From positions 1 through 19,963 of IMG/VR virus record IMGVR_UViG_3300014911_000574: 19,963 nt of DNA. One strand, 5' to 3'. The position numbers and the translations under genes were made by a program. Position 1 is the stretch's first letter. Every line of letters begins with the position of its first letter. The notes beneath the pieces were generated by a model. That model saw nothing but the letters and a program-made list of their open reading frames with translations, did no database searches and was not told the origin of the DNA. This document shows, in pieces, positions 1-19,963 of this stretch.

Positions 1-123
1 TTAACCCCACGGGGCGTTAAGAAAAAAGTCTTAAACACATGAACATAAAGTCTCAAAACAAAAAATGAAGAATGACACAGTTAAAATAACCAAACAAAAC
101 AAATAAATAAAATAAAATACAAA
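1..123 (+). repeat. Left inverted terminal repeat (123 bp)
   Basis: 1..123 is the exact reverse complement of 19841..19963; identity breaks at 124. Confidence 0.97.
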
Positions 124-131
124 AGAGGGGT

Positions 132-368
132 TTATGATTGGAATGATCTTACTTCTCCAATCAATAGGAGCATTGCTATGTATGGTGTTAACGACAATAA
201 TATGTCGAACGTCATTATGAATACGAAAATTGTTAGTATTATTGTTAAAAATGTTATTACATTCCATACCGTTAATTCGTCGCAACCCTTGATTGATAGG
301 AAAAAGAAGGTTATATTGTCTATGATAAAGAAGTTTAATGTTAATAAGATGAATAGTGTAATATCCAT
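132..368 (-). CDS. Small membrane protein (78 aa)
   Basis: Very hydrophobic, 2-3 TM-like segments; SD AGGTGA upstream of the ATG (revcomp of 375-380). Confidence 0.65.
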   Translation of the reverse strand: MDITLFILLTLNFFIIDNITFFFLSIKGCDELTVWNVITFLTIILTIFVFIMTFDILLSLTPYIAMLLLIGEVRSFQS

Positions 369-397
369 GTAAAATCACCTACGTATTATAACTATTT

Positions 398-442
398 TCA
401 GAACTCAGAAAAAAATCTTTTTGTCTAAACTCTGAATTCTGA
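398..442. promoter_or_regulatory. Inverted repeat TCAGAACTCAGA-N21-TCTGAATTCTGA, putative operator
   Basis: 11/12 match between arms; lies in the divergent intergenic region between 368(-) and 605(+). Confidence 0.5.
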
Positions 443-604
443 GACGTGAGAAAATGAGAAAGAGAAGTAAGGTCTACATCAATGTAACGTACGACACTAA
501 GTCATGATCATTCTTAACATACCTCTTAAAGTGTAATGACATAGTCTCAAGTCTATTCAATATCAAGGAAAAATTAAAATCTTGCAGACTTTCAAGGAAA
601 AAAC

Positions 605-1036
605 ATGTTCAAGCTTGTAAAAGACCAAAACCTCATTAAAATAGCTCAAGAACTAGATGAATTCTTTAGCTCGATAGCAATTGTAAGAGGATTTTATGAA
701 GATGTATTTCACAACAAGGAAGAAATACTTCTAAGCTATGAACTTAACCATGACGTTCATGAGATAGACATTGAATTTATAAAACAAATGCTCACGATAA
801 CAGTATGGTTTAAGAACATGGTAAGAACTGGTCTTACAATTGATTTGAAAGACAAGATCGATATTTTCGCAATCTATGGAAAAAGAATGATCTATGTAGA
901 AAACAAAGAAACAAATTCCGTAATATTGCGATCATTAAAGAACATAAGAGTATTGTCTATCGAATTGAAGAAACATAAAGAGGAAAAAAATGGGAAAGTT
1001 ATTTGGAGATCGATCCTCGAAATCTCAATTCCATAA
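605..1036 (+). CDS. Hypothetical protein (143 aa)
   Basis: Intact ORF; BRE/TATA-like GAAAAATTAAAA near 568-579; T-run after the stop. Confidence 0.8.
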   Translation: MFKLVKDQNLIKIAQELDEFFSSIAIVRGFYEDVFHNKEEILLSYELNHDVHEIDIEFIKQMLTITVWFKNMVRTGLTIDLKDKIDIFAIYGKRMIYVENKETNSVILRSLKNIRVLSIELKKHKEEKNGKVIWRSILEISIP

Positions 1037-1041
1037 CCTTT

Positions 1042-1299
1042 TTATTGCTTTACCTTACTCTCAAGATCCTCTTTTAGTGATGATGGATCGACAATTCTAT
1101 GTTCTAAATACCAAATGATTTCTTCTAAAACTGTTTTTATCATTGGATTTGAAACATTTTCTGATGTTCTTTTTAATGCGCTTAAAAGCAATATAAAGTC
1201 AGTTCTCTCTGCTTTCTTTCCCAAGAGTCTTCCAATAATGAAAAGTATAATTGCTATAATTGTTAATATAATGTCTAATAGTGTATGGATTTCGTTCAT
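1042..1299 (-). CDS. N-terminal TM protein (85 aa); candidate egress (pyramid-type) protein
   Basis: Single TM (IILTIIAIILFIIGRLL) followed by a helical tail; overlaps the upstream ORF by 4 nt; SD GGTGA. Confidence 0.7.
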   Translation of the reverse strand: MNEIHTLLDIILTIIAIILFIIGRLLGKKAERTDFILLLSALKRTSENVSNPMIKTVLEEIIWYLEHRIVDPSSLKEDLESKVKQ

Positions 1300-1493
1300 G
1301 TTTTTTCACCATTTTTTACGTCATTATCTAAAATTTGATTTTGGATTTGTTCTATAAGTTTTATTATCCATTTAATGTCTTCCTCAATTTTCGAGACCTT
1401 ACTATCGAGTTTCCAAATCCTCTCAAACAAAAACGTAATCAAGAAAATTGCTATTCCGCTTAGTATTTCTGCAATGTCTATGTTCAATGTCAT
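1296..1493 (-). CDS. TM plus coiled-coil small protein (65 aa)
   Basis: TM ILSGIAIFLITFLF then heptad pattern LDSKVSKIEEDIKWI; SD AGGGG; TATA-like AAAGCTTATAT on the minus strand at ~1530-1540. Confidence 0.75.
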   Translation of the reverse strand: MTLNIDIAEILSGIAIFLITFLFERIWKLDSKVSKIEEDIKWIIKLIEQIQNQILDNDVKNGEKT

Positions 1494-1711
1494 TTCATTA
1501 CCCCTATGAAGCTTTTCACTACTACATTGATATAAGCTTTATGTTAGTTTTCATGCCATACATTGTATGCGTTACTAAAAAGAGAAACGCGTAGAACCAT
1601 ACACCATAAAAACAATGTAGGTCGATAGTATGATGTCTCAAAACTACTGTCGCTACTGACTCAGATAATTTAAGCTACCACTACCAAAACACGGCTTTAA
1701 TGCTAGAGTAA

Positions 1712-1733
1712 CGAAACTTCAAGGAAAGTTTCG
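1712..1733. terminator. Hairpin CGAAACTT-N6-AAGTTTCG just after the end of the long minus-strand operon
   Basis: 8-bp perfect arms, 7 nt downstream of the stop of 1741..2520. Confidence 0.35.
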
Positions 1734-1740
1734 AGAGGTT

Positions 1741-2520
1741 TTACTGATGTAGATGGTCTATAATCCATCTATATACGTCTATGGTCTTTCTAGGTAATTC
1801 TCTTGTGTTTGAAACTACAAGACCATCTCTAACATGAACATGTTGTTTAACACCATGAGCAATAACTTCCTCGAAATCACTTGAAAATCCATGATCTGAC
1901 AATACAATCCAGTACTTAGGCTTTGAAAGAGTTATGAGTTCTCTAGCAAATTTAAAGGCCTTGTTATACCAGTAAAAGGCCTTTCTAAGACATTCCTCAT
2001 TATGTAGTGTTTGAAAGAAATGGTGATGTGCTTGATCAGGGATTGGATACCATACAATGAACAAATCCCATTCTTTCACTATATTCCTAATGACAATCTC
2101 ATGAAATCTATCTACAATACTTTCAAAATTGTCTTTAAGAGGTAACCATGCATCTACCCAATTCATTCCATAGAGATCAACATTGATATTAACAGTAGGT
2201 ATTTTTACTGGAACGTTCAAGATCTTAACCTTAAAACCATGTTCAATAGCAATATCCCAAACATACTTACCCTTGTAATCGCCTAAGATAGAGCATGGTT
2301 TGTCAAGTGTTTTAAATCCAAAAACACCATGTTCATTACTGTACTTTCCAGTGAAAAAATTATGTAGTATCGTCGGTGTTATTGGTATATCATCGATGTA
2401 AAGCATATTCCTATGAAAGTTATGGAAAAACCATTTTACATTATCCATATACCAGAGAAATAAATTACAGAAAACAAATGACGCACCATCTAGGATAATT
2501 ACAAGAACTTTATGACTCAT
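1741..2520 (-). CDS. Alkaline phosphatase superfamily protein (nucleotide pyrophosphatase/phosphodiesterase-like)
   Basis: Motifs KVLVIILDGA, PITP..HNFFTG..SNEHGVFGF, PDQAHH, VLSDHGF and a late His; no signal peptide. Confidence 0.85.
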   Translation of the reverse strand: MSHKVLVIILDGASFVFCNLFLWYMDNVKWFFHNFHRNMLYIDDIPITPTILHNFFTGKYSNEHGVFGFKTLDKPCSILGDYKGKYVWDIAIEHGFKVKILNVPVKIPTVNINVDLYGMNWVDAWLPLKDNFESIVDRFHEIVIRNIVKEWDLFIVWYPIPDQAHHHFFQTLHNEECLRKAFYWYNKAFKFARELITLSKPKYWIVLSDHGFSSDFEEVIAHGVKQHVHVRDGLVVSNTRELPRKTIDVYRWIIDHLHQ

Positions 2521-2709: not shown

Positions 2710-3279
2710 TTACCACTCAAACCTAAAGATGTAGGTTATCGTAACAGTTTGACCAGTAGTTACATGAACAGGACTTGGTAGTACATCTCTAGCTAGTAGG
2801 AAATACCTCAAGTAGCCACTGTTATTTTGAGCTCTTATTGTTAATCCAATTTCGTTAATATCCATTTCTGTATTTACTGTTATAGATCCTGAAATGGCAA
2901 CTTCGATATAATTATCACCGTAGATAATGTTTATTGTTTTTACATATTCCCTTTTTACAAGATTTTCTAATTTATAATCAGTTGGTTTGGGAGGTGAAGT
3001 TCCAGTCCCAATTTCAATATACCCCTCGTAACATTCTTCATAACAAAAGTTATAACCTGAATATCCTATGATTAAAGTTTCGCTAGACCCTCCATATTCG
3101 ATGAAATTAGCGTAATTTTTTGTATTTAACTCTTCTGTTCCTACGAGAATCATTGCGAGAAGTTTTGCGAAGTTTAACGTTAATGCATCACCTTGCTTTT
3201 CTATTCTTTTCAAGACCTTTCCATCTCTATCCTTCGTCTCAATGACAACTCTATAACATGACTTTGATTTAACTTTCAT
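2710..3279 (-). CDS. Putative beta-rich virion/fibre-attachment protein
   Basis: Pattern IEIGTGTSPP.PTDY.L ... INEIGL ... LLARDVLPSPV.V...QTVTITY resembles tail-fibre N-terminal/collar domains of phage and archaeal virus structural proteins. Confidence 0.6.
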   Translation of the reverse strand: MKVKSKSCYRVVIETKDRDGKVLKRIEKQGDALTLNFAKLLAMILVGTEELNTKNYANFIEYGGSSETLIIGYSGYNFCYEECYEGYIEIGTGTSPPKPTDYKLENLVKREYVKTINIIYGDNYIEVAISGSITVNTEMDINEIGLTIRAQNNSGYLRYFLLARDVLPSPVHVTTGQTVTITYIFRFEW

Positions 3280-3288
3280 GGTCTATCC

Positions 3289-3762
3289 CTAACTCACTGT
3301 TATTTGATAGCTTACCTTACATATATTTTTACTTGTAGCTACCGACTTTGGAGGTTCTGTAACAGTGTAACTTATTTTACATGTCTTTACCTCATATGCA
3401 AGTGTTATTATCTTGATAATCTCAAAGACTTGTTTTAAAACATCGATGATATCCCTAATTGTTTTTGTTGAATCTACAAGTAAGTTATGATCATCTGTTA
3501 TAACATAGTCTCCATATTCTACATATCTTAGCTTACTTATTATATTGTCAAGTGTCTTCAATAGATCATCAAGTTTTGAATCGATGGAAACCCCCCATTC
3601 CCTTGCTTTCTCTCTAATACAGTTTAATATATTCCTTATTGTTTTTATACAATCAACAAGCAGGTTGTGGTCTTCTGGTAAGATGTAGTCTTCCTTGGTA
3701 ACATACCTTAGCTTTGCCATGATGTTGTTCAACGTTTTAATTAGATCTTCGAGATTTGACAT
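3289..3762 (-). CDS. Putative structural protein with internal 60-aa duplication
   Basis: LEDLIKTLNNIMAKLRYV..DYI..DHNLLVD repeated at a 180-bp period (3521 vs 3701). Confidence 0.7.
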   Translation of the reverse strand: MSNLEDLIKTLNNIMAKLRYVTKEDYILPEDHNLLVDCIKTIRNILNCIREKAREWGVSIDSKLDDLLKTLDNIISKLRYVEYGDYVITDDHNLLVDSTKTIRDIIDVLKQVFEIIKIITLAYEVKTCKISYTVTEPPKSVATSKNICKVSYQITVS

Positions 3763-3763
3763 G

Positions 3764-4309
3764 TTACTTCACCTTTTTGAATAAGATCCAAAATGTAGCG
3801 TTTATAAGACCATTTGCAACATGTTCTAGGCCTATCAACCTACACAATCTCTTTAAACAATTTGGGTGTAATGTGTGATAGTGAGATTCATCTCCATTGT
3901 ATGCGCAACGATCATAGCAAATAACAGATTGTATGAATAACAATCCGTTTTTCCTCAATACTCGATGACACTCCTTCAGACAACGTACGTAATCTAGTAT
4001 ATGCTCTAATGTCTCAAGCATGACAATGAGATCAAAGTAATTGTCTCGAAATGGGAGTTGATCACCAGATCCTAGAACGTCAGGATTTACATCATACTTC
4101 ACAACATCAAGTCCAACATAAAGTCCCTTGAAATTCCATTCTCTCAATGTTCTTTCCAAAAGCCTATTATGACAACCAATTTCCAAGATCTTAAATGGTT
4201 TATATTGATCGATGATTTGTTTTAATTCGTTTCGAGCTATCAAGATAAGTCCCCAACCGTGTTTCTTAGATTCCTCATGTAACATCTTGGAAAGTTCATG
4301 ATACTTCAT
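3764..4309 (-). CDS. Class I SAM-dependent methyltransferase
   Basis: KILEIGC motif I, YVGLDV, LPFRDNYFDLI...LEH, RVLRKNGLL. Confidence 0.9.
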   Translation of the reverse strand: MKYHELSKMLHEESKKHGWGLILIARNELKQIIDQYKPFKILEIGCHNRLLERTLREWNFKGLYVGLDVVKYDVNPDVLGSGDQLPFRDNYFDLIVMLETLEHILDYVRCLKECHRVLRKNGLLFIQSVICYDRCAYNGDESHYHTLHPNCLKRLCRLIGLEHVANGLINATFWILFKKVK

Positions 4310-5358
4310 GATATACCCTCGAGAAAACCGTACTTGTCAAGTATATCAACAAGTTTTTCAACGATTTTAGACCAGTGGTAATTCTCGATAATGTACTTTC
4401 TTATTCTTGCAAATCTTTCCTTGTACTCTTTTATATGGTCGATCACATGTATTAACTTTTCAATCGCATCATTAACATCGATTTCAAATCCATAACCTAC
4501 ATGTACTGGATTGTCATTGTAAACCTTGACTTTCCTAGCAACCTTAATTAAAACACTATCTTTTGCATAGTCAATCCAAGATCCTTGCTCTGGAACTAGA
4601 ACTACAAGGCCCCTCGCTAATGCTTCTAAGACATTAAGTTCAAAACCACCGCCTCTCGAGAAGCAAAGTAAAATATCACATGAATCGTAAAGATCTACAA
4701 GATCTTTCTCACTTAAAAAACCATTGACTTCAATATGTCTTAACCTTTTGAGTAGCATGTAGTGATACCCACATGGATTCCATGTTTTTAAGACAAGTAT
4801 AGTGTCTGGTCTTTTCCTTTGTACATACCTCATAACTTCAAAGACAAGATCCGCTCCTTTTCTTTCCCCTGAATGCCATAGGAAGAAAAGGACTTTAACA
4901 CCATTTGCAAGTCTTACCCTCATGATATCTGGATTTGTTGGAAAGTTCTTAGGCCTAACAAATTCATCATCTATACCATGAGGTAAAACCTCGATATTGG
5001 TTTTAACACCAGATTCTTGAAATACCTTTTTAGCAAATGTCGATGGGACTATAACAAGATCGAACATGTTGATAATATTTACTGCATATTCAGATATTCG
5101 ATCACTATCTGCAACCTCAAAACCCCCCAGCTTGTTTGAGCATTTCCTCAATCTTTCAGGATCTATGAACTTTGAAATGATGGGATACATTATTGGGTGA
5201 ATCAAAAAATTGTGTTTTACAGACCATAAGATCCTAGACCATTCTTTTTCATCAATGTCATACACATTCACATAGCGTCTCAAGTACTTGAGATGCTTCT
5301 CCGCTATTACTGTAAATGAAACAACATGCCACTTAGGATATACATAAAACAATGCCAT
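4306..5358 (-). CDS. GT-B (GT4-like) glycosyltransferase
   Basis: VIVPS.F, VLPHGID, ERKG.D, SRGGGFELNVLEALARG. Confidence 0.9.
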   Translation of the reverse strand: MALFYVYPKWHVVSFTVIAEKHLKYLRRYVNVYDIDEKEWSRILWSVKHNFLIHPIMYPIISKFIDPERLRKCSNKLGGFEVADSDRISEYAVNIINMFDLVIVPSTFAKKVFQESGVKTNIEVLPHGIDDEFVRPKNFPTNPDIMRVRLANGVKVLFFLWHSGERKGADLVFEVMRYVQRKRPDTILVLKTWNPCGYHYMLLKRLRHIEVNGFLSEKDLVDLYDSCDILLCFSRGGGFELNVLEALARGLVVLVPEQGSWIDYAKDSVLIKVARKVKVYNDNPVHVGYGFEIDVNDAIEKLIHVIDHIKEYKERFARIRKYIIENYHWSKIVEKLVDILDKYGFLEGIS

Positions 5359-5360
5359 GA

Positions 5361-6203
5361 CTATGCTTCAAAGATATTGTAAATAGCAACTGTTACTTTT
5401 GTTGATGGTGAAACTCTTACATTTACTTTGTCATTCTTCATAACTGTAAAGTCAAATTCCTTCCATGCATTTCTTGGAATTAACCTTCCCTCATTGAGTA
5501 ATGATATTACTTCTTGCGTCAATCCTGCAGGAATCCACTTGAGGTAACCATAGAAATCACGATCACCAGTAATTTTGATCCTAACCTTACCATCACCTTG
5601 AACTACAAGATCACTCTCGAATATATCGATAAACTCTGGAGCGTAGTAATCAACCATTAGGCCTAGCAACTTAGGTTTTTTTTCATCTATTAGTGTCTCT
5701 AGCCTTGTCTCTATATCACTAAGTCTTGAGTAAATATCTGCAAGACTATACCCTGCATATATCGATTCGATCTTTTCACTAACTTCAACTATCCTACCTT
5801 CTATTTGAGACAATGGAATATCGAATAACGTTAATCTTGATGTGTATTGTGTAATGTATGCATAGTCAATAGCCTCTGTAATCCTTACCCTAGCTTCATG
5901 ATATAGATCTGCAATGTAAATTGGATCTCCATCTTTCAAAACTCTCTTTCCAGAGATGAAACAATCATACGTGAAGTAACCATAGCCTGAATGAACTTCC
6001 TTAATCCTAGCATTTGGATTTCCTACCAAATATGCAATGTCTTTGTCAGGGATTATATCTCCAACAAGGTAACCATATGAAAAGACAGTTTGTATTCCAG
6101 ATACTCTATTATGAAGATCATCGAGAGCATCAACTACCAACTGGCCCCATCTTGTTTTTATCACTTCTCCAGATCGAGGCTTCCATAGGCCGTAGTACGA
6201 CAT
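5361..6203 (-). CDS. Putative fibre/receptor-binding protein (280 aa)
   Basis: GDIIPDKDIAYLVGNPNARIKEVH matches the GxIxPxxDxxYxxGxxxxRxxxIY fibre motif; central coiled coil; beta-rich C-terminus; SD GGTGA. Confidence 0.6.
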   Translation of the reverse strand: MSYYGLWKPRSGEVIKTRWGQLVVDALDDLHNRVSGIQTVFSYGYLVGDIIPDKDIAYLVGNPNARIKEVHSGYGYFTYDCFISGKRVLKDGDPIYIADLYHEARVRITEAIDYAYITQYTSRLTLFDIPLSQIEGRIVEVSEKIESIYAGYSLADIYSRLSDIETRLETLIDEKKPKLLGLMVDYYAPEFIDIFESDLVVQGDGKVRIKITGDRDFYGYLKWIPAGLTQEVISLLNEGRLIPRNAWKEFDFTVMKNDKVNVRVSPSTKVTVAIYNIFEA

Positions 6204-11425: not shown

Positions 11426-11641
11426 TTAAAACCTAAAGAGCCCTTGTCTCAATAACTTCCTAACTTCTTTAGCAAGTTCTCTCGCGTATTGATAAAAGAC
11501 ACAATTACAATTATGATCAAGAACTTCAAGACTCATTGAAATTACAATCCTCATAATATTGTTCATGATGTTACTTAGTTCTTGTTGTGTCATTGTTGGT
11601 TCTTGAGGTTTTTGTTCTGGTTTTATTTGTACCTCACTCAT
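11426..11641 (-). CDS. Hypothetical protein (71 aa)
   Basis: 4-nt overlap with the upstream gene; SD GGTGA. Confidence 0.7.
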   Translation of the reverse strand: MSEVQIKPEQKPQEPTMTQQELSNIMNNIMRIVISMSLEVLDHNCNCVFYQYARELAKEVRKLLRQGLFRF

Positions 11642-13780: not shown

Positions 13781-14079
13781 TCAAGTATGACTTCGATATA
13801 CAGTTTTGGATTTTTAGCGTGAGGATCTATTTCAATTCGATATTTGTATCCTTGCAATCTAAATTGAGCATAACGAGAAATGGCTTGTAATTGTCTTACT
13901 ACATCTTGTTTCGCAATTTCTTTATCAGTTAATACCTCAATTTCAGTCCCATTAGATAACCTAATTATGTTTCCTTTCACTTCAACGACTTTTAATCCTT
14001 CTTTTTCCTCATGTTTTTCTTCCTCTTTCATTTCTTCAACATTATTTTCAGATCTTATTTCGATATCCGAATACGTCAT
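13777..14079 (-). CDS. Hypothetical protein (100 aa); start reassigned to 14079
   Basis: SD GTGAGGGGA just upstream of ATG 14079; the longer ORF-track start would overlap the MCP gene and its promoter. Confidence 0.7.
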   Translation of the reverse strand: MTYSDIEIRSENNVEEMKEEEKHEEKEGLKVVEVKGNIIRLSNGTEIEVLTDKEIAKQDVVRQLQAISRYAQFRLQGYKYRIEIDPHAKNPKLYIEVILD

Positions 14080-14151
14080 GGAAAGTCCCCTCACAAAAAA
14101 TGAGATATAGTGAGTTACTATATATGTCATATTGTCTCTATATTTCACATG

Positions 14152-14159
14152 TTTATATA
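14152..14159 (+). promoter_or_regulatory. TATA box of the MCP gene
   Basis: TTTATATA ~37 nt upstream of ATG 14196; no SD, so the leader is short or absent. Confidence 0.5.
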
Positions 14160-14195
14160 CATTGTTCTTTTTCATGTTATTCTCGGGTCTAGCGT

Positions 14196-14564
14196 ATGCC
14201 ATATAGATCCTACACAATAAGAATCAAGAAATGGAGTTCAAAGTTCGATCCTGATACAGTACGTAACAGATTTGCTCAAGTAAAAGACATTGCAAATGAT
14301 CAAGCTCAAGAACAATTTGCAAGACTAGTAGACTTTGAACAGGCCGTTAAGCATAGACTTAATGAACTTGGAGTTCCAGTAATTCAAATGCCATTTTACC
14401 TAAACGTTGCTCGACAAATCTATAGAGCAATGACAAGACACACAGGAAAGACATTAGAAACTGAAGTCAAGGTTATTAAAGCAACATGGACTGCAAGAGG
14501 ACTAGACCCTGCAATCATCGATGAAATCATCAAGTTAATGATCGGTTACGTCCCAACATATTAA
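14196..14564 (+). CDS. Major capsid protein, SIRV2-type (Adnaviria) fold
   Basis: RSYTIRIKKWSSKF resembles SIRV2 MCP RSYSQRYAKWQAKF; LNELGV...FY.NVARQIYR and GLDPAIIDEI match the helical bundle; monocistronic with a poly-T terminator. Confidence 0.88.
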   Translation: MPYRSYTIRIKKWSSKFDPDTVRNRFAQVKDIANDQAQEQFARLVDFEQAVKHRLNELGVPVIQMPFYLNVARQIYRAMTRHTGKTLETEVKVIKATWTARGLDPAIIDEIIKLMIGYVPTY

Positions 14565-14839: not shown

Positions 14840-14874
14840 TTTGGTAACGCGTATCTCTTTTGGGGAACGCGCCC

Positions 14875-15432
14875 ATGAGAAAGAAAGTAAACCTAAATTC
14901 CTCCTATGAAATGACACCTAGAAAAGCCCGATTACTTATTTTAACTCACACAGTTAAAATAACTAGTCAAGATAATGTTAAGTCTTCTACGAAAAGAAAA
15001 AGAAAATGGGTTTTAGTTCAAGAAACTTTAGAGGAAGCTCAAGAATTGTTTAAAGTTCAATTTGAAAAGATTGCAGATGGAGTTTACATAACAAAACAAA
15101 GACATTATGTTGGAAAATTAAGACAATTAGCTAATTTCTTACAAACAAAATTACCAAATGTAACAATATTCTTTGTAAAACAAGTAAAACCAACTACTGT
15201 TGGATTCTTTGAAGAAAAGGAAGAAAGACAAATAACAAGGAAGTTAATGTTTGAAGGTAAAGAAATTGATGAGAGTGTCATTAAGCAATGGATTAGAGAA
15301 ATTTACAATGATTTTGACTTTGCTTTAAAGAAATATGGAAAGGAAAGAGGATTATGGAAATCTGTAGGATCTGGTAGAGCCGAAAAGATCTACTTAATCA
15401 TGAAATGGTTAATTGAGTACATGGGCTTATAG
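14875..15432 (+). CDS. Basic hypothetical protein (~185 aa); start uncertain (14860/14875/14911)
   Basis: Long Lys/Arg-rich ORF downstream of a strong promoter. Confidence 0.7.
   Translation: MRKKVNLNSSYEMTPRKARLLILTHTVKITSQDNVKSSTKRKRKWVLVQETLEEAQELFKVQFEKIADGVYITKQRHYVGKLRQLANFLQTKLPNVTIFFVKQVKPTTVGFFEEKEERQITRKLMFEGKEIDESVIKQWIREIYNDFDFALKKYGKERGLWKSVGSGRAEKIYLIMKWLIEYMGL
14936..14962. repeat. Palindrome TTATTTTAACT-CACAC-AGTTAAAATAA built from an ITR word
   Basis: 11-bp perfect arms; 14948-14963 is identical to ITR 75-90 (16 nt). Confidence 0.75.
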
Positions 15433-15443
15433 CGATTCCATAG

Positions 15444-15836
15444 GTGATGGATATTCCAAGGTTTAAACGTCAAGCTAAGTACAAGGTAATAAGTGATGAC
15501 AATTTCTGGTTAGAGGATTTAAAGACCATGAACGAAAAGACCATTAAGATTGTAACATTAGCTAAAGTTCCCATCGAGTTTGAAGCTAAGGTGATTGCAG
15601 TCGGGATTTGTGATTTTGGGTCGATGTTCATTTACTTTATGATGAAGAAAGACAATGAAATCATTATGTTCAAATGCTACTACCCAAGAAATGTTGTCGA
15701 ACAAGTCATGAAAGACTTAAACTATGATTCAATAGAGCGTTTTTACGAATGGATAGGAAAGACTATGAAATTCAGAAGAAGACCATATGTTGGATCTCAA
15801 GGTTGTAGGTATTACCCAATCCCAATTTCAAGCTAG
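15444..15836 (+). CDS. Hypothetical protein (130 aa), possibly OB-fold nucleic-acid binding
   Basis: Beta-beta-beta-helix-EWIGKTMKF-beta pattern; the fold is a guess. Confidence 0.65.
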   Translation: MMDIPRFKRQAKYKVISDDNFWLEDLKTMNEKTIKIVTLAKVPIEFEAKVIAVGICDFGSMFIYFMMKKDNEIIMFKCYYPRNVVEQVMKDLNYDSIERFYEWIGKTMKFRRRPYVGSQGCRYYPIPISS

Positions 15837-16172
15837 CATTTTTCTTAGGTCTTTTATAAACTTCATTCTATCCCTTGTAATCCTTATTATTTCCCTTGCT
15901 TGATTCATCATTTCTTTTGCAAAGACAATATCATCACTTTCAAGTCTTTTAATTGCAACATCGATTAGTGATATTGCTCTGTCTAGGTTCATGATCAATT
16001 CATCTATCATTGTATGACGTTTTATCGTCATTATCTTTTTTGCTTTCCATAGGGCCTTGTATATTGTCGATCTTGAACATTTCAATTCTTGCATTATAAG
16101 AGCAATGGAATAACCCTTCTGGTAAAGTTCAACGATTTTTTGCTCTAACTCCGTAAGTCTTACCTCTCTCAT
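15828..16172 (-). CDS. HTH DNA-binding protein with C-terminal coiled coil
   Basis: LTELEQKIVELYQKGYSIALIMQELKCSRSTIYKAL. Confidence 0.8.
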   Translation of the reverse strand: MREVRLTELEQKIVELYQKGYSIALIMQELKCSRSTIYKALWKAKKIMTIKRHTMIDELIMNLDRAISLIDVAIKRLESDDIVFAKEMMNQAREIIRITRDRMKFIKDLRKMLA

Positions 16173-16518
16173 GTTTTTTCACCATTTCTAAACAATATTT
16201 ATAGAATACACACTTTTCATTGCAAAGACCATTCTTCCTAAGCTCACAAACATCGTATAGAAGCTTGAGGATATCAAAAAGTCTCTTTCTAGCCCATGCT
16301 TTTTCCCTCTTTAAATCTCTAAACTTGTCTTCATACAACTTATGAGCTAGAGGTCTCAAATCCTCTCTTACCCTCGATATATAATCTTGAAACTCGATGT
16401 GTAATTGTCTTTCCTTTTCCTTCAATTCCTGAAGTAACTTCAATTCTTTCAAGGCCTCTCTAAAGTAGTACTCAAATGGGTTTTTCAAAATGTCATATAT
16501 CCTACTTTCCATAGACAT
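16129..16518 (-). CDS. Coiled-coil protein with Cys cluster (possible metal binding)
   Basis: Charged helical body; C-x6-C-x3-C-x4-C. Confidence 0.7.
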   Translation of the reverse strand: MSMESRIYDILKNPFEYYFREALKELKLLQELKEKERQLHIEFQDYISRVREDLRPLAHKLYEDKFRDLKREKAWARKRLFDILKLLYDVCELRKNGLCNEKCVFYKYCLEMVKKHERGKTYGVRAKNR

Positions 16519-16569
16519 ATTTTATCTGTAGAAAGACCGTTCATTACCTTGTATTTAAGTGTAATGTCT

Positions 16570-16583
16570 TGTTTACGTAAACA
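16570..16583. promoter_or_regulatory. Perfect 14-bp palindrome TGTTTACGTAAACA
   Basis: In the divergent intergenic region 16519-16668. Confidence 0.5.
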
Positions 16584-16619
16584 CACAATGAAAGATCGCT
16601 TTTTCCATACAATCATCGT

Positions 16620-16650
16620 TTAGTGTCGCAGCCTATAAACCAGACACTAA
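16620..16650. promoter_or_regulatory. TTAGTGTC-N15-GACACTAA inverted repeat (copy 2) bracketing a TATA box
   Basis: Spacer contains CTATAAAC ~30 nt upstream of ATG 16669. Confidence 0.7.
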
Positions 16651-16668
16651 ATAGTAAAAAATGGGAGT

Positions 16669-17082
16669 ATGAACTCACAAAAAAGTGATTACCTAACCGA
16701 GATAATTCAGAAGTTCTTAAAATTTAGAGAAATGAGAAGATCAGGATTAACACTTGAAATTCCATTGAGCGACAGACGTTACTGGATCGATTGGACTTAT
16801 GTTCCTGCAGATACGAAAGATGGTAAGAAGTATTACGGGCCTTACTATCGTCTACGATGGATTGAAAGTGGTAAGAAAAAGTGTAAGTATTTAGGAAAGG
16901 CCCCGAAAGAACATGTTCATTTGATAAACGAATTATCATCAACATTTCAGGATCTGGAAGAAACTTTCGAGAACATTCTAAAACTTCTCATGAAATTCAA
17001 TTACCTTTACAACAAGTTCATGAACTTGTACGAAACATACAAGGAATTGATGAAAGAATACATTGAGAAGATCCAGAAGTAA
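16669..17082 (+). CDS. Putative DNA-binding protein (GPY...GK...YLGK motif) with coiled coil
   Basis: YYGPYYRLRWIESGKKKCKYLGK, a motif common in small proteins of archaeal mobile elements; SD GGGAG. Confidence 0.7.
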   Translation: MNSQKSDYLTEIIQKFLKFREMRRSGLTLEIPLSDRRYWIDWTYVPADTKDGKKYYGPYYRLRWIESGKKKCKYLGKAPKEHVHLINELSSTFQDLEETFENILKLLMKFNYLYNKFMNLYETYKELMKEYIEKIQK

Positions 17083-17115
17083 AAAACATTGGTTTTTTTA
17101 TTTCTCTTTTTTCTT

Positions 17116-17373
17116 TTAATGAAACTCACATTTCACAATTTGATGTAGTCTGTGTGCTAGAAAGTCAAAGAGCATTATCAATTCTGAAATCGAAAGTGAG
17201 TCAATATCAATCGAGAGATTAAGACTGAAGTATGACATTAAAAGTTGAATAGTTTCAATCAACTTTTCCCGAATGTAATGTGGCGATATCTTCCCAAATT
17301 GATACTGAACGATTAATTCATACATTTTAGAGCATTTTTCTATAATTTCATTAACTTCTTTTAGTTTCAACAT
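17116..17373 (-). CDS. Hypothetical helical protein (85 aa)
   Basis: SD GAGGG; minus-strand TATA TTTATAAG at ~17408-17415. Confidence 0.65.
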   Translation of the reverse strand: MLKLKEVNEIIEKCSKMYELIVQYQFGKISPHYIREKLIETIQLLMSYFSLNLSIDIDSLSISELIMLFDFLAHRLHQIVKCEFH

Positions 17374-17444
17374 ACTCTTTTACCCTCATTCTGAGTGTCT
17401 CTGAAAACTTATAAATTTTATAATAGGTAATATAGTGGGAGAGT

Positions 17445-18014
17445 ATGTCTCAAGAAAGTCATTTCCACAACATCAACTACTACAACAAGACGATAGGCTT
17501 AACACTACCGAAAAACGTCGTGGAAACGATAAATCATCTTATTACAGAAGGGAGGTTTGCTTCCAGAAAAGAGTTTATTATAAAGGCCATAGAGTATTGG
17601 ATAGAAACTTACATGAAGACAAGCGATGATAAAGAAAGGTTTGCTCAAATTAGGGCTGGTATTCCATCTTTTATCTTTGAAAAAATATCTAAGTTGAATG
17701 TTCAAGACATACACAATTTCGTCTATGATGCAGTAATTTCGTTTCTCGTAAAGTGTCTTAACGACATTATCGATGAACAAAGTAGGATCGTTGAATTGAA
17801 AACAAGACCGAAGATCAGGTATAAACAAGGTGAAAAAAGAGAGATGCAGTTAATAACAGTGCACATGCCAAAATACATTGTTCACATACTTGATGAACTG
17901 GTGAAAGAAGGTCTCTCACCTTCCAGAGCAGAGCTCATTAGAGAAGCAGTGAGGAAATACATTAATGAACGAATTTTCTCAGAAGTTGAAGACATGATCA
18001 TGCTAGGCCCTTAA
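17445..18014 (+). CDS. Multi-domain ribbon-helix-helix (CopG-like) regulator
   Basis: RHH units IGLTLPKNVVETINHLITEGRFASRKEFIIKAI and ITVHMPKYIVHILDELVKEGLSPSRAELIREAV, plus a degenerate middle unit. Confidence 0.88.
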   Translation: MSQESHFHNINYYNKTIGLTLPKNVVETINHLITEGRFASRKEFIIKAIEYWIETYMKTSDDKERFAQIRAGIPSFIFEKISKLNVQDIHNFVYDAVISFLVKCLNDIIDEQSRIVELKTRPKIRYKQGEKREMQLITVHMPKYIVHILDELVKEGLSPSRAELIREAVRKYINERIFSEVEDMIMLGP

Positions 18015-18077
18015 ATTCATGATTTTCTTTTTCCCTTTTTATTTTTATTTTATCTGTTTGTTTTAAATACTCTTAAT

Positions 18078-18096
18078 TCTGAGTTTTAAACTCAGA
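18078..18096. promoter_or_regulatory. Palindrome TCTGAGTTT-T-AAACTCAGA between TATA and start codon
   Basis: Perfect 9-bp arms; TTTAAATA at 18062-18069; ATG at 18101. Confidence 0.65.
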
Positions 18097-18100
18097 GATT

Positions 18101-18328
18101 ATGGTCGATCGAAAAACCCAATTCCTACATGCGTTATTCGAAATAGCTCAAATATCGAAGAATCTTCAAACATCAATTCAAATATACCTAAGGAAAAAAG
18201 ATATTGACATTGTAAACGAGTTGATAGCTCTTAAAATTCCTGTTAAGCTTACAAGGAACAAGTCATTATACATCTCATGGAAAAACGCGGATGATATTGT
18301 CAAGAAACTAAAACATATCTTAAAGTGA
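18101..18328 (+). CDS. Hypothetical protein (75 aa), paralogue of 18333..18566
   Basis: Shared motif LYISWKNADDIV / IYVSWRKCLDIL. Confidence 0.7.
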   Translation: MVDRKTQFLHALFEIAQISKNLQTSIQIYLRKKDIDIVNELIALKIPVKLTRNKSLYISWKNADDIVKKLKHILK

Positions 18329-18332
18329 GATC

Positions 18333-18566
18333 ATGAAACTTAATGTAAAAGACATTGAGTTTCAACTTCTAAAGCTCATGGAGACATGCGCTAAACATAA
18401 GATCTCACTTGAAATTGTTACTAGTCCTGCAAAACATAAAGTGTTGATCGAGATAGCAAGTAAGTTAGGCCTTACAATTGAAAAGCGAAAGTTTATCTAC
18501 GTCTCATGGAGAAAATGTCTTGATATTCTTACCAGATACAATAATCATGAGGTTGGTAAACCATGA
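18333..18566 (+). CDS. Hypothetical protein (77 aa), paralogue of 18101..18328
   Basis: Same shared motif; 4-nt spacing from the upstream gene. Confidence 0.7.
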   Translation: MKLNVKDIEFQLLKLMETCAKHKISLEIVTSPAKHKVLIEIASKLGLTIEKRKFIYVSWRKCLDILTRYNNHEVGKP

Positions 18567-18751
18567 GTAGATCATCAGGTTGTGAATATCGTTACAAGGT
18601 TAGGATAAGGGATAAGAACAATCCTGAACTTTTCTATGAGGTCTTCTTGTGTAGATTGACGAATAAAGAATGTACTTACAAACCATCGAAATGTCCATTA
18701 CTTAAAAAGAAACGGTTAGGCCTTAGCGAAATAACAAGTTTCTTTGAGTAA
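18563..18751 (+). CDS. Small Cys-rich (Zn-binding?) protein (62 aa)
   Basis: Four Cys (C...CRLTNKEC..KPSKCP); 4-nt overlap; SD GAGGT. Confidence 0.65.
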   Translation: MSRSSGCEYRYKVRIRDKNNPELFYEVFLCRLTNKECTYKPSKCPLLKKKRLGLSEITSFFE

Positions 18752-18797
18752 TTTAAAAGGCCCATACATCACAAATATACTTCATTTATTTACACCA

Positions 18798-19439
18798 TCA
18801 CTTTTTGATCAATTCATCATATTTTTTCCTTAGATCGACAAATCTTTTTACTTGATCTTCATCAACATATCTCGAGTATTTAATGATATACTTCTCAATC
18901 TTTTCAATGGTCTTTCTTATTTTATTGCTCATGTCAATCAACGTTTTGTTCCATACCTTTCCTGAAGCATTCCATTCACTTTCAAATTTTGTTATAAGAT
19001 CATCAAGATCGTCAATCATTTGATCAATAATAATCTTGATAGAGGCTTTTGCTTCCGACTTATGCTTTATCTCCTTAATCTCATGTAGATGTACAATAAC
19101 TGGAGATCCTATTGTTGTTAATGCAGATAATAATTGTGATTGTTCGAATGTTCCTTTCATAATTTCTTCATGGAATAACATGTTGATAGCAATGATATGT
19201 CTCAAATATGCAGAAACTGAAATTCCCTTTTCTTTCGCTATCTTCCTTATCCTATCGTAAAGTTCCTTACTAACTGAAAGTCTAATGCAAGTATGTACTT
19301 TTGGAACTCTTACAAGTCTATAGTATTCCAAGAACTTTTCTCGCAACTTTTCAGTTAAGTTTTTATCCTGAGAATATATTGTATTCTCTCGATCCTGCAT
19401 TAAGGCCCCCCGCTCGCGCGTTTTTTCTTTTCCTTTCAT
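18798..19439 (-). CDS. RHH-domain protein with C-terminal helical bundle; alternative start 19400
   Basis: IRLSVSKELYDRIRKIAKEKGISVSAYLRHII. Confidence 0.8.
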   Translation of the reverse strand: MKGKEKTRERGALMQDRENTIYSQDKNLTEKLREKFLEYYRLVRVPKVHTCIRLSVSKELYDRIRKIAKEKGISVSAYLRHIIAINMLFHEEIMKGTFEQSQLLSALTTIGSPVIVHLHEIKEIKHKSEAKASIKIIIDQMIDDLDDLITKFESEWNASGKVWNKTLIDMSNKIRKTIEKIEKYIIKYSRYVDEDQVKRFVDLRKKYDELIKK

Positions 19440-19545
19440 ACAAACATTATTAAAACTATTTTTTCATAAGCTTATAATTTAGACAATGTATGTTCGAGTA
19501 AAAAGCATATAAATACCACATAATACTGTCATGTAGGGAAATGTA

Positions 19546-19833
19546 ATGATAGCTCTAAAAACACAAATCTTGATTCTATACTTTTCATTGATTGCAATAT
19601 TCTTTTATCACCTTATAAAAATGCTTGATACTGTTAATGACTTTTATTACATTATGACAATGATTTTAGGATATGTAGGATTAGCATTTTCACCACTGCT
19701 TGTTTTTGTTCTTGACCTTGTTGGTCTATTAGAATATGCTAGAAATTACATGTTAGCGTTTTCGACATTTACACTAACTGTCACATTAATCTATGAAGTA
19801 AAAAAGAAAAGAAAAAGCAACGACTTCAAATGA
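19546..19833 (+). CDS. Membrane protein (95 aa, ~3 TM)
   Basis: Three hydrophobic segments and a basic C-tail; BRE/TATA AAAAAGCATATAAATA at ~19500-19515. Confidence 0.75.
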   Translation: MIALKTQILILYFSLIAIFFYHLIKMLDTVNDFYYIMTMILGYVGLAFSPLLVFVLDLVGLLEYARNYMLAFSTFTLTVTLIYEVKKKRKSNDFK

Positions 19834-19840
19834 AATTCAA

Positions 19841-19963
19841 TTTGTATTTTATTTTATTTATTTGTTTTGTTTGGTTATTTTAACTGTGTCATTCTTCATT
19901 TTTTGTTTTGAGACTTTATGTTCATGTGTTTAAGACTTTTTTCTTAACGCCCCGTGGGGTTAA
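19841..19963 (-). repeat. Right inverted terminal repeat (123 bp)
   Basis: Exact reverse complement of 1..123. Confidence 0.97.

What the first reader, a model, noticed from the sequence alone, without database searches (positions are those of the whole stretch)
1..19963. Compact single-MCP Adnaviria virus lacking recognisable replication genes: candidate new lineage
Seen: ITRs, one SIRV2-type MCP, and a fibre and glycosylation module. Known: rudiviruses have one MCP and usually an HUH Rep, Holliday junction resolvase and SSB, in larger genomes; lipothrix- and tristromaviruses have two MCPs. Here I can recognise no Rep, resolvase, polymerase, helicase or nucleotide-metabolism gene. Inference: a divergent Tokiviricetes lineage with A-form DNA virions (~0.5 um if SIRV2 packing scales) that uses an unknown end-replication mechanism.
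Basis: partly seen in the sequence, partly recalled or inferred. Interest (0 to 1): 0.85.

Follow-up and report, generated by a model that had tools for sequence, protein, structure and literature searches.

The report
Ahmunvirus-like archaeal rod virus genome
The window is the nearly complete linear genome of an uncultivated rod-shaped archaeal virus from Guaymas Basin sediment; it really does lack any recognisable replication gene, but it belongs to a metagenomic clade already described in 2023-2026 papers, not to a new lineage.

Summary
The ends are perfect inverted repeats: 123 nt in the window and 141 nt in an independent assembly, so the window lacks at least 18 nt per end. There is one canonical SIRV2-type capsid gene (14196-14564). 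There are also two GT4 glycosyltransferases, a SAM methyltransferase, a phosphodiesterase-family enzyme and a 1498-aa homologue of the rudiviral terminal-fibre protein P1070.

No Rep, Hjc, SSB, ATPase/helicase, Cas4, polymerase or nucleotide-metabolism gene was found. I searched with Pfam, PHROGs, NCBIfam, custom HMMs on all six frames, hhalign and motif scans. No ORF has a Walker A motif.

"Single MCP" needs qualifying. The conserved 359-aa gene next to the first glycosyltransferase has a C-terminal MCP-like domain (hhalign probability 97.6%).

"New lineage" is not supported. At least 25 related contigs exist, with MCPs 60-94% identical, mostly from hydrothermal samples. Gene order and content match published descriptions of Ahmunviridae (PBV300), Thermococcales-associated ahmunviruses and Asgard "Baiyanviruses". 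Several relatives carry Hjc, so its absence here is a sub-lineage trait.

Most likely the virus replicates entirely with host enzymes. Verdict: new member of a known kind, of modest interest. In passing, I found a large family of bacterial (WOR-3) chromosomal homologues of this capsid protein.

The parts
1..123 (.). Left inverted terminal repeat. It is truncated: the independent assembly adds 18 nt outside it. Positions 1-20 form an imperfect palindrome, TTAACCCCACGGGGCGTTAA.
19841..19963 (.). Right inverted terminal repeat, 100% complementary to 1-123.
605..1036 (+). 143-aa ORFan. It has no family or PDB match and no homologue in related genomes.
1042..1493 (-). Two small ORFs of 85 and 65 aa, each with a hydrophobic N-terminal stretch. 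They may be membrane proteins. No family match for the two ORFs (Pfam only).
1741..2520 (-). 259-aa enzyme of the type I phosphodiesterase / nucleotide pyrophosphatase (alkaline-phosphatase superfamily) family. Weak homologues sit at the end of the structural block in relatives.
   Evidence: PF01663, E 2e-11
2710..3279 (-). 189-aa protein with weak similarity to phage tail-fibre families; possible receptor-binding or structural protein. A homologue is present in L019.
   Evidence: phrog_5417 E 5.8e-5; phrog_4176 E 3.5e-3
3289..3762 (-). 157-aa protein with an internal duplication, judged by eye from the translation. Function unknown.
3764..4309 (-). SAM-dependent methyltransferase, 181 aa.
   Evidence: PF08241, E 4.9e-14
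4306..5358 (-). GT4 glycosyltransferase, 350 aa, counterpart of SIRV2 ORF356 and ARV1 ORF368.
   Evidence: (30-34% identity, E 1e-45 to 1e-58)
5361..6203 (-). 280-aa conserved clade protein. It is weakly similar to SIRV2 ORF269 and is probably structural.
   Evidence: 40-46% identity to relatives; phmmer E 9.8e-5 to ORF269
6213..10709 (-). 1498-aa homologue of the rudiviral terminal-fibre / minor structural protein P1070. The N-terminal helical repeats and the C-terminus both align to P1070-family proteins. The gene contains tandem repeats of 444 nt (about 3 copies) and 120 nt (about 3.4 copies).
10709..10999 (-). 96-aa conserved clade protein of unknown function, part of the structural block.
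11426..11641 (-). 71-aa conserved clade protein of unknown function, part of the structural block.
11638..12717 (-). 359-aa 'MCP-like minor structural protein'. Residues about 251-353 are homologous to the SIRV2-type MCP. The N-terminal 250 residues match nothing. The gene is conserved next to the GT in every clade member.
   Evidence: hhalign probability 97.6, E 3.8e-12; reciprocal hmmsearch 4e-9; AFV1 ORF140, E 0.0058; Foldseek top hits are all Adnaviria MCPs but E >= 0.23
12719..13780 (-). GT4 glycosyltransferase, 353 aa, counterpart of SIRV2 ORF335, the MCP-adjacent GT of rudiviruses.
   Evidence: (30-34% identity, E 1e-35 to 1e-47)
13777..14217 (-). 132-146-aa protein of unknown function, divergently placed beside the MCP. 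It has weak homologues in L008, L033 and L039.
14196..14564 (+). Major capsid protein, 122 aa, SIRV2 fold family. In this genome it is inverted relative to the GT block compared with relatives.
14875..15432 (+). 185-190-aa basic protein. Its N-terminal domain has a beta-alpha-beta-beta-alpha-beta ferredoxin-like fold, and Cas2 is the best structural match, but the match is weak. Apart from a weak match of the RHH regulator's RHH motif, it is the only arm gene shared with relatives (L019 and L032).
15444..15836 (+). 130-aa ORFan with no match.
15828..16172 (-). 114-aa helix-turn-helix DNA-binding protein (HTH_7 type).
   Evidence: PF02796, E 6e-8
16129..17373 (.). Three ORFans of 129 aa (-), 137 aa (+) and 85 aa (-). 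They are helical and basic. The 137-aa ORF has faint DUF1678 similarity. None resembles Hjc, Rep or the MCP.
17445..18014 (+). 189-aa protein with two ribbon-helix-helix (CopG) domains; transcription regulator.
   Evidence: PF01402, E 1.3e-13, two stretches
18101..18751 (+). Three small basic ORFs of 75, 77 and 62 aa. The first two are weak paralogues.
18798..19439 (-). 213-aa protein with a weak RHH (Arc/AvtR/NikA-like) motif at residues 50-84 and a helical tail.
19546..19833 (+). 95-aa predicted membrane protein with two hydrophobic peaks.

Best explanation
The window is the essentially complete linear dsDNA genome of an uncultivated rod-shaped archaeal virus of the realm Adnaviria (class Tokiviricetes). 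It is missing at least 18 nt at each end. It comes from Guaymas Basin hydrothermal sediment.

It belongs to the ahmunvirus-like assemblage, which includes Ahmunviridae (PBV300), the Thermococcales-associated ahmunviruses and the Asgard-associated Baiyanviruses.

About two thirds of the genome (1.7-14.6 kb) is a virion module:
- a 122-aa SIRV2-fold capsid protein, inferred to wrap A-form DNA as a homodimer;
- two rudivirus-type GT4 glycosyltransferases, a methyltransferase and a phosphodiesterase-family enzyme, inferred to modify virion proteins;
- a P1070-like giant terminal-fibre protein;
- a 359-aa protein whose C-terminal domain is a capsid-protein paralogue, inferred to be a minor or terminal structural subunit.

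The two arms carry fast-evolving ORFans. Most of the recognisable ones are small DNA-binding regulators (three RHH domains and one HTH). There is also a possible Cas2-like protein and small membrane proteins.

No replication, recombination or nucleotide-metabolism enzyme is encoded. I infer that the genome is copied by the host replisome from ITR termini that probably fold back or are covalently closed, as in rudiviruses. I also infer that replicative junctions are resolved by the host's Holliday-junction resolvase, because several close relatives still carry their own Hjc and this genome does not.
For: Identity and completeness:
- The ITR is shown.
- The window is a whole contig, found twice in independent assemblies.
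- The source sample is Guaymas Basin.

Virion module:
- The MCP reaches Pfam's cut-off.
- The GTs, the P1070 homologue and the ORF269 homologue are shared with Rudiviridae.
- The MCP-like domain of the 359-aa protein is supported.

Clade:
- 14 close MCPs were found in the protein database.
- 17 metagenome loci, 3 IMG/VR loci and 3 archaeal MAG contigs carry relatives.
- The MCP tree puts the window inside a tight metagenomic clade, well apart from Rudiviridae.
- The shared block MCP, GT, MSP, 71 aa, 96 aa, P1070-like, 280 aa is seen.

Match to the literature:
- A 122-aa MCP-1 with GT, a COG5412 minor structural protein and small ORFs as the conserved block; Hjc, Cas4-like, CarboxypepD_reg and DUF2341 as variable genes (PMC12934983 supplement 3B).
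- An MCP-like minor structural protein and a GT downstream of the MCP (PMC13700489).
- In PBV300 the 'fusion' MCP gene and the MCP have accessions two apart, UYL64987.1 and UYL64989.1 (bioRxiv 10.1101/2025.08.23.671958).

Absence of replication genes:
- Pfam, PHROGs and NCBIfam give no hit.
- Custom HMMs of rudiviral Hjc, Rep, gp17, gp18 and gp19 against all six frames find nothing meaningful.
- hhalign probabilities are below 2%.
- No ORF has a Walker A motif.

Hjc is present in relatives L005/L020/L038, L006, L039 and L046, and a Cas4-like gene in L037.
Against: - Family membership rests on synteny and published descriptions. PBV300, the Baiyanviruses and Chiyouvirus could not be fetched for a direct comparison. 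PBV300's accession was not among the 20 clusters looked up.
- The window lacks two features reported as core for ahmunviruses: Hjc and a second MCP.
- About 14 ORFs (roughly 4.5 kb) are ORFans whose folds were not tested. Only two structure predictions were available, and both had low overall confidence (pLDDT 44.8 and 54.1). A novel initiator or nuclease could be hidden among them.
- The structure of the termini is unknown. Hairpin ends and host-Hjc resolution are inferences from rudivirus biology, not shown here.
- The host is unknown. The only hint is that relatives were binned into 'Thermoprotei' MAGs.
Confidence: 0.7

Rival explanations
1. One reading: this is a genuinely new family-level lineage of Tokiviricetes, separate from Ahmunviridae, Rudiviridae and Chiyouviridae, and it is defined by a single MCP and a total lack of replication genes.
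For: - The loci with PBV300-like traits (an MCP with a beta C-terminal extension: L017, L018) have MCPs only 42-44% identical to the window's; with L045 and L046 (45%), which were not checked for that trait, they form a separate clade in the tree.
- The window, L019 and L003 lack Hjc and a second MCP.
- No direct comparison with PBV300 was possible.
- Nothing in INPHARED matches at the nucleotide level.
Against: - The conserved block and the variable gene repertoire of the window's own clade (L005, L006, L007) fit the published 'Thermococcales Ahmunviridae' description closely, including the 122-aa MCP-1 (PMC12934983 supplement 3B).
- Related viruses with a single MCP plus an MCP-like MSP are already described as Baiyanviruses, closest to PBV300 (PMC13700489).
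- Loss of Hjc is patchy within the clade, so it does not define a lineage.
Confidence: 0.2
2. It is a divergent member of the Rudiviridae, i.e. a new genus of compact rudiviruses similar to MRV1.
For: - It shares the MCP, both GTs, P1070 and an ORF269-like protein with rudiviruses.
- It has a single canonical MCP.
- Its size is like MRV1's 20.3 kb.
Against: - The MCP is only 22-27% identical to rudiviral MCPs and lies on a separate long branch.
- It has none of the gp17/gp18/gp19 cluster, Hjc, P488, P564 or ORF309/ORF176 families that all four rudiviruses examined share.
- The MCP-like 359-aa protein has no sequence-detectable rudiviral counterpart.
Confidence: 0.04
3. It is a defective or satellite-like genome that depends on a co-infecting relative for replication and resolution functions.
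For: - It has no replication or resolution genes.
- A related genome (L019/L031, MCP 88% identical) is present in the same metagenome.
Against: - It has a full virion module and intact ITRs.
- The co-occurring relative L019 also lacks recognisable replication genes and Hjc.
- The same genome was assembled twice at full length.
Confidence: 0.05

Closest known systems
Ahmunviridae (Methanophagales virus PBV300, OP413840) and the Thermococcales-associated ahmunviruses of PMC12934983
   Same: - A linear genome of about 20 kb with ITRs, from hydrothermal settings (Guaymas, Pescadero, vents).
- A 122-aa SIRV2-fold MCP-1 followed by a GT, an MCP-like or 'fusion' protein, small ORFs and a giant minor structural protein.
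- A second GT and a methyltransferase.
- No polymerase or helicase.
   Different: - The window has no Hjc.
- It has no second MCP, neither the 131-aa type nor the MCP with a beta-domain seen in L017, L018 and L039.
- It has no lectin and no Cas4-like gene.
- Its MCP gene is inverted relative to the GT block.
Baiyanviruses (Asgard-associated Adnaviria, PMC13700489)
   Same: - A single MCP plus an 'MCP-like minor structural protein'.
- A GT next to the MCP and a methyltransferase.
- Genomes of 24-30 kb from hydrothermal or sediment samples.
   Different: - Baiyanviruses are reported to encode Hjc, queuine tRNA-ribosyltransferase and TFB. None of these is in the window.
Rudiviridae (SIRV2, ARV1, MRV1, SMRV1)
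   Same: - The SIRV2-fold MCP.
- Two orthologous GT4 glycosyltransferases.
- The P1070 terminal-fibre protein.
- An ORF269-like protein.
- RHH regulators.
- ITRs.
- MRV1 has the same genome size.
   Different: - MCP identity is only 22-27%.
- None of gp17 SSB, gp18 ATPase, gp19 Cas4 nuclease, Hjc, Rep, P488, P564 or P98 is present.
Lipothrixviridae, Ungulaviridae and Tristromaviridae
   Same: The MCP fold. The 359-aa C-terminal domain matches AFV1 ORF140 and ORF132 best in the PDB.
   Different: - Those families have two adjacent MCP paralogues of similar size that form a heterodimer, and they have envelopes.
- Here the second MCP-like domain is the C-terminus of a 359-aa protein, and it is separated from the MCP by a GT.

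Membership tests
Adnaviria / Tokiviricetes | SIRV2-fold alpha-helical major capsid protein | tested here: met
   Pfam PF12193 at 40.2 bits against a cut-off of 25.2; tblastn hits to 36 rudivirus and lipothrixvirus MCPs
Adnaviria / Tokiviricetes | Linear dsDNA genome with terminal inverted repeats | tested here: met
   ITR of 123 nt in the window and 141 nt in the ENA assembly, both perfect
Adnaviria / Tokiviricetes | A-form DNA in a helical rod-shaped or filamentous virion | not testable with these tools
Needs virions and cryo-EM.
Ahmunviridae (sensu PMC9894754 and PMC12934983) | Conserved block of MCP-1 (about 122 aa), GT, MCP-like/'fusion' protein, small ORFs and a giant COG5412/P1070-like minor structural protein | tested here: met
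   The gene order in the window and in relatives agrees with the published descriptions. This is a comparison with text, not with sequences.
Ahmunviridae | Second divergent MCP (131-aa MCP-2, or an MCP with a C-terminal beta domain such as UYL64970.1) | tested here: not met
   No window ORF other than the MCP and the 359-aa protein matches MCP profiles. The MCP-2 of L039 hits only MCP-1. Such genes are present in L017, L018 and L039.
Ahmunviridae | Holliday junction resolvase Hjc, reported as a core gene | tested here: not met
   There is no Hjc in the six-frame HMM search or in hhalign. It is present in relatives L005, L006, L020, L038, L039 and L046.
Ahmunviridae | Proteome-level clustering with the exemplar PBV300 (ViPTree or gene-sharing network) | not testable with these tools
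   OP413840/NC_074636 are absent from the searchable collections. The accession was not found among the looked-up clusters.
Rudiviridae | MCP groups with rudiviral MCPs | tested here: not met
   The tree shows Rudiviridae on a separate long branch. Identity is 22-27%.
Rudiviridae | Conserved gp17 (SSB), gp18 (ATPase), gp19 (Cas4 nuclease) cluster and Hjc | tested here: not met
   Custom HMMs against the six-frame translation found no meaningful hit. No Walker A motif is present.
Rudiviridae | P1070 terminal-fibre protein and two GT4 glycosyltransferases | tested here: met
   BLASTP E 1e-5 to 1e-13 for P1070 at both termini; E 1e-35 to 1e-58 for the GTs
Lipothrixviridae / Tristromaviridae | Two adjacent MCP paralogues of similar size (heterodimer) and an envelope | tested here: not met
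   There is only one MCP-sized paralogue. The second MCP-like domain lies within a 359-aa protein. Few predicted membrane proteins are present. The envelope itself cannot be tested.
'Samediviridae' (PMC12934983) | Core replication set: SSB, PCNA, MCM-like protein, AEP primase, AAA+-wHTH | tested here: not met
   No such Pfam, PHROG or NCBIfam hits; no Walker A motif

The most novel reading that the evidence does not exclude
A sub-lineage of ahmunvirus-like viruses (this genome, L019 and L003) propagates an ITR-ended linear genome with no virus-encoded replication or junction-resolving enzyme at all. Either the host provides every step, including terminal resolution, or one of the unmatched arm ORFs is a new kind of initiator or terminal-resolution protein. 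Exact internal copies of an ITR motif (at 14948-14963 and 5429-5441) would then mark its binding sites.
Probability: 0.2. Interest if true: 0.55.

Novelty: new member of a known kind. Interest (0 to 1): 0.35.

Why it matters
As a genome it adds one more complete, low-GC (34%) member to the ahmunvirus-like rod viruses of hydrothermal sediments. It shows that even Hjc is dispensable in this group. That narrows the minimal adnavirus gene set to a virion module plus regulators.

It also gives independent sequence-level support for an idea proposed in 2025-2026 papers: these viruses carry a larger protein with an embedded capsid-protein domain beside the capsid gene. This bears on how adnavirus capsomers evolved.

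It does not open a new lineage or mechanism by itself.

The by-product may be of wider interest. WOR-3 bacteria carry a large chromosomal family homologous to the Adnaviria capsid protein, and in the MCP tree this family nests within the viral sequences.

Tried and rejected
- Muninnvirus/Huginnvirus of Odinarchaeum was recalled from memory as a possible match. The paper shows these are His1-like and DJR viruses, so this was rejected.
- 'Samediviridae' has a fitting size and GC range, but the family is defined by SSB, PCNA, MCM and AEP genes that are absent here.
- A nucleotide search of INPHARED gave no match. This negative is uninformative for Ahmunviridae and Chiyouviridae, because their records are not in that collection.
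- I looked for a second MCP-like domain in the N-terminal 250 residues of the 359-aa protein, since a preprint calls the PBV300 counterpart a fusion of two MCP subunits. None was detectable by hhalign (probability 1%), and the AF2 model is unreliable in that region.
- I looked for a rudiviral counterpart of the 359-aa protein among ORF488, ORF564, ORF309 and all ORFs of at least 100 aa from four rudiviruses. Only the MCPs themselves scored.
- An HUH-like 'HVHLI' motif occurs in the 137-aa ORF, but nothing else supports a Rep: hhalign probability is 0.1% and there is no PDB hit.
- The 185-aa protein was considered as a replication initiator. Its fold looks Cas2/VapD-like rather than HUH, but the matches are weak (E >= 4e-3), and the BFVD search was uninformative.
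- I tried to identify PBV300 proteins among representative-library hits through cluster look-ups. They were not found.
- No tRNA or Rfam RNA is present.
- Sigma-70-type promoter-like sites are not enriched over shuffled sequence, which is as expected for an archaeal virus; terminator-like sites numbered 14 against 7.5 expected.

Full report
**What is in the window**

The 19,963-bp window is a whole contig, JGI Ga0180301_10001252, also known as IMGVR_UViG_3300014911_000574. A second contig of the same metagenome is identical to GenBank 'B15_Guay16_scaffold_00965'. IMG 3300014911 is a Guaymas Basin sediment metagenome (PMC6478937).

The ends are perfect inverted repeats, 1-123 and 19841-19963. 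An independent ENA assembly of the same genome is 19,999 bp, identical over the 15,768 bp of overlap that was compared (window 4196-19963). It extends 18 nt beyond each window end, and its perfect ITR is 141 nt. The genome is therefore near-complete but truncated at both tips, and the real terminal structure is unknown.

GC content is 0.30-0.39. About 89% of the sequence is coding. No tRNA or Rfam RNA is present.

**Gene content**

Positions 14196-14564(+) encode a 122-aa protein that passes Pfam's threshold for the SIRV2-type coat protein (PF12193, E 4.4e-10). It is 22-27% identical to rudiviral MCPs.

A long minus-strand block from 13780 down to 1741 encodes the following:
- A GT4 glycosyltransferase at 12719-13780, 30-34% identical to SIRV2 ORF335.
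- A conserved 359-aa protein.
- Two small conserved proteins of 71 and 96 aa.
- A 1498-aa protein. Its N-terminal helical repeats and its C-terminus both align to rudiviral P1070 / ORF1115 terminal-fibre proteins. It contains internal tandem repeats.
- A 280-aa protein weakly similar to SIRV2 ORF269.
- A second GT4, 30-34% identical to SIRV2 ORF356.
- A SAM methyltransferase.
- Three proteins of unknown function of 157, 189 and 55 aa; the first two have only weak PHROG matches.
- A phosphodiesterase-family enzyme.

The arms (0.4-1.5 kb and 14.8-19.9 kb) hold small ORFs:
- An HTH_7 protein.
- A protein with two RHH domains.
- A 213-aa protein with a weak RHH motif.
- One small protein with predicted membrane helices and two with hydrophobic N-termini.
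- About ten ORFans.

Apart from a weak match of the RHH regulator's RHH motif, only one arm ORF has homologues in related genomes. This is the 185-190-aa protein at 14860-15432, with counterparts in L019 and L032. Its N-terminal domain is predicted as a beta-alpha-beta-beta-alpha-beta fold. The best structural matches are Cas2 and VapD, but they are weak (E >= 4e-3) and the model has low overall confidence.

**Is there really only one MCP?**

No second MCP-sized paralogue exists in the window:
- MCP profiles hit only the MCP itself and the 359-aa protein.
- Every other ORF scores below 2% probability against the MCP profile.
- The genuine MCP-2 of relative L039 hits only the window's MCP-1.

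The 359-aa protein (11638-12717) does carry an MCP-like C-terminal domain:
- hhalign of its family against the MCP family gives probability 97.6% and E 3.8e-12 over residues 251-353. With 13 sequences the result is the same.
- Reciprocal hmmsearch gives E 4e-9 and 1e-8.
- A lipothrixvirus MCP profile hits it, with hhalign probability 94.4%.
- Its profile finds AFV1 ORF140 and ORF132 as the best PDB sequences (E 0.0058).
- The AF2 model is poor overall (pLDDT 44.8) but reaches 60-89 in the C-terminal helices. Its top Foldseek PDB hits are AFV1 ORF132 (TM 0.71 on the target), the SIRV2 MCP, and AFV1 MCP2 and ORF140, although the E-values are not significant.
- A scan of 1.84 billion representative proteins with the family profile found 140 clusters, 66 of them at E <= 1e-30. 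The tail consisted of 130-136-aa proteins matched by profile positions about 250-366, and 8 of 10 of these hit Pfam's Adnaviria MCP families.

The N-terminal 250 residues match nothing.

Two 2025-2026 papers describe this gene type. One calls it an 'MCP-like minor structural protein', conserved in ahmunviruses and Baiyanviruses (PMC13700489). The other calls it a 'fusion' capsomer gene next to the GT in PBV300, UYL64987.1 (bioRxiv 10.1101/2025.08.23.671958).

**Are replication genes really absent?**

Within the reach of these tools, yes.
- Pfam, PHROGs and NCBIfam gave no polymerase, primase, helicase/ATPase, nuclease, SSB, PCNA, Rep, integrase or nucleotide-metabolism hit.
- HMMs built from rudiviral and clade Hjc, SIRV Rep, gp17, gp18 and gp19 were run without filters on every six-frame segment of at least 25 aa. 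They gave only noise.
- hhalign of each candidate ORF against the Hjc and Rep profiles gave probabilities of 0.9% or less.
- No ORF has a Walker A motif.
- PDB sequence searches of six unknown ORFs were negative.

One caveat remains. About 14 ORFans were not examined at fold level, because only two structure predictions were allowed.

**Relatives and placement**

The MCP has 13 close homologues (60-88% identity) in the protein database, all metagenomic. Context look-ups and scans gave at least 25 related contigs. They include two contigs in Guaymas 'Thermoprotei archaeon' MAGs (L019 at 88% and L020 at 75%) and one in an Aenigmatarchaeota MAG.

GC content across the clade ranges from 0.34 to 0.55. 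The block MCP, GT, 359-aa protein, two small ORFs, P1070-like protein and 280-aa protein is conserved. The arms are not.

Hjc is present in L005/L020/L038, L006, L039 and L046, and a Cas4-like gene in L037. Neither is found in the window, L019 or L003. Within the ORFs scanned from its arm, L019 has only a Csx3 domain as a recognisable gene.

In an MCP tree the window sits in a tight clade with L019, L003, L037 and L006. Rudiviridae lie on a separate long branch.

This picture fits the expanded Ahmunviridae as published. That description has a complete linear genome of about 19.6 kb and a 122-aa MCP-1 in a conserved block with a GT, a COG5412 minor structural protein and small ORFs. Hjc, a Cas4-like gene, CarboxypepD_reg and DUF2341 are the variable genes (PMC12934983 supplement 3B). 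L007 does carry CarboxypepD_reg and DUF2341 genes. The picture also fits the Baiyanviruses.

'Samediviridae' are excluded by their replication gene set.

I could not fetch PBV300, Chiyouvirus or the Baiyanvirus sequences. Membership is therefore inferred from synteny and published descriptions, not demonstrated. Two reported core features, Hjc and MCP-2, are not met by this genome.

**Mechanism**

Shown:
- A rudivirus-type virion gene set, consisting of the MCP, virion-modifying GTs and the P1070 fibre.
- Several DNA-binding regulators.
- No replication enzymes.

Inferred:
- The capsid is built from MCP homodimers around A-form DNA.
- The 359-aa MCP-like protein is a minor or terminal structural subunit.
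- The genome is replicated by the host replisome from fold-back or hairpin ITR termini.
- Junctions are resolved by the host Hjc in place of the viral Hjc that relatives retain.

Short imperfect palindromes lie near the tips: window 1-20, and CTACGCCGTAG within the 18-nt extension. Exact internal copies of an ITR motif occur at 14948-14963 and 5429-5441, far above chance. These could be protein-binding sites, but that is speculation.

**Verdict**

The claim that no replication genes are recognisable stands. The 'new lineage' claim does not: this is a new member of a recently described kind.

**By-product**

The MCP profile retrieves a large family of about 122-aa proteins: 620 hits, and most of the best 120 carry bacterial or WOR-3 annotations where any is given. 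They lie on long contigs of WOR-3 bacterial MAGs, in two of them (L023, L024) between clpX and flavoprotein or ferritin genes, with no other viral genes nearby in the five loci checked. In the MCP tree these bacterial sequences nest inside the viral clade. No paper in the library mentions both Adnaviria and WOR-3.

Noticed in passing
L023:9989-10354, L024:9950-10354, L025:9983-10348, L027:3228-3689, L028:9989-10357, L022:2368-2736 (bacterial MAG contigs); proteins P0017-P0122: There is a large family of about 122-aa proteins homologous to the Adnaviria MCP, 29-37% identical to the window's MCP. A profile search found 620 hits at E <= 1e-3, the best 120 mostly from bacteria or WOR-3 where annotated. 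They are encoded on long contigs (up to 412 kb) of candidate division WOR-3 bacteria. In L023 and L024 the gene sits between tig-clpP-clpX and flavin reductase, flavodiiron and ferritin genes, and none of the five loci checked has other viral genes nearby. In the MCP tree the bacterial sequences nest inside the viral clade next to the paralogues from an Aenigmatarchaeota MAG contig, which suggests capture from a virus rather than ancestry. No paper in the library links Adnaviria and WOR-3.
   Followed up: partly
L021 (JAJHRL010000018.1, Aenigmatarchaeota MAG, 10.8 kb, GC 0.31): 449-814, 2960-3547, 4363-4845, 4852-5514, 6085-6948, 9987-10352: A small contig binned with a DPANN archaeon carries six MCP-like genes of varied length plus a 526-aa P1070-like gene. 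The two ends of the contig are 72-96% identical direct copies at the protein level. This could be an unusually small multi-MCP adnavirus or a tandem arrangement.
   Followed up: no
window 14948-14963(+), 5429-5441(-), 15642-15654(+): The ITR segment 65-90 has internal copies. The 16-mer ACACAGTTAAAATAAC is exact at 14948 (3 matches in total against 0.06 expected). The 13-mer ATGAAGAATGACA is exact at 5429(-) and has one mismatch at 15642 (4 matches against 0.17 expected). These may be regulator or initiator binding sites, or recombination scars.
   Followed up: partly
L029:1-18 and L001:15769-15786 (ENA ERZ27227320 k141_1049524): An independent assembly extends the genome by 18 nt at each end (TCCTACGCCGTAGATATT...). 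This lengthens the perfect ITR to 141 nt and adds a short near-terminal palindrome, CTACGCCGTAG. The window's own first 20 nt form a second imperfect palindrome.
   Followed up: partly
window 6537-7912 and 9659-10063 (inside the 1498-aa gene): The gene contains tandem repeats of 444 nt (about 2.9 copies, 73-74% matches) and 120 nt (about 3.4 copies). The window's fibre protein is about 400 aa longer than that of its closest relative L019 (1087 aa), apparently through duplication of a 148-aa module.
   Followed up: partly
L019:7531-7950: The closest large relative, from the same metagenome, encodes a protein with a Csx3 domain (PF09620, E 1.8e-17). This is a candidate ring nuclease acting against type III CRISPR signalling.
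   Followed up: no
window 14196-14564 compared with L005, L019, L003 and L007: In the relatives the MCP is co-oriented with, and immediately upstream of, the GT and MSP block. In the window the MCP gene is inverted, and a 132-146-aa gene (13777-14217) is inserted between it and the GT.
   Followed up: no
L017:7011-7772(-), L018:7131-7922(-), L039:8914-9492(+): More distant clade members carry an extra MCP paralogue with a C-terminal extension (192-263 aa). This matches the 'MCP plus beta/jelly-roll domain' genes reported for PBV300, Chiyouviridae and BaiyanV2. The window has no such gene.
   Followed up: partly
window 18101-18328 and 18333-18566: Two adjacent small basic ORFs of 75 and 77 aa are weak paralogues: 32% identity over 28 aa, with a pairwise E of 6e-5.
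   Followed up: partly
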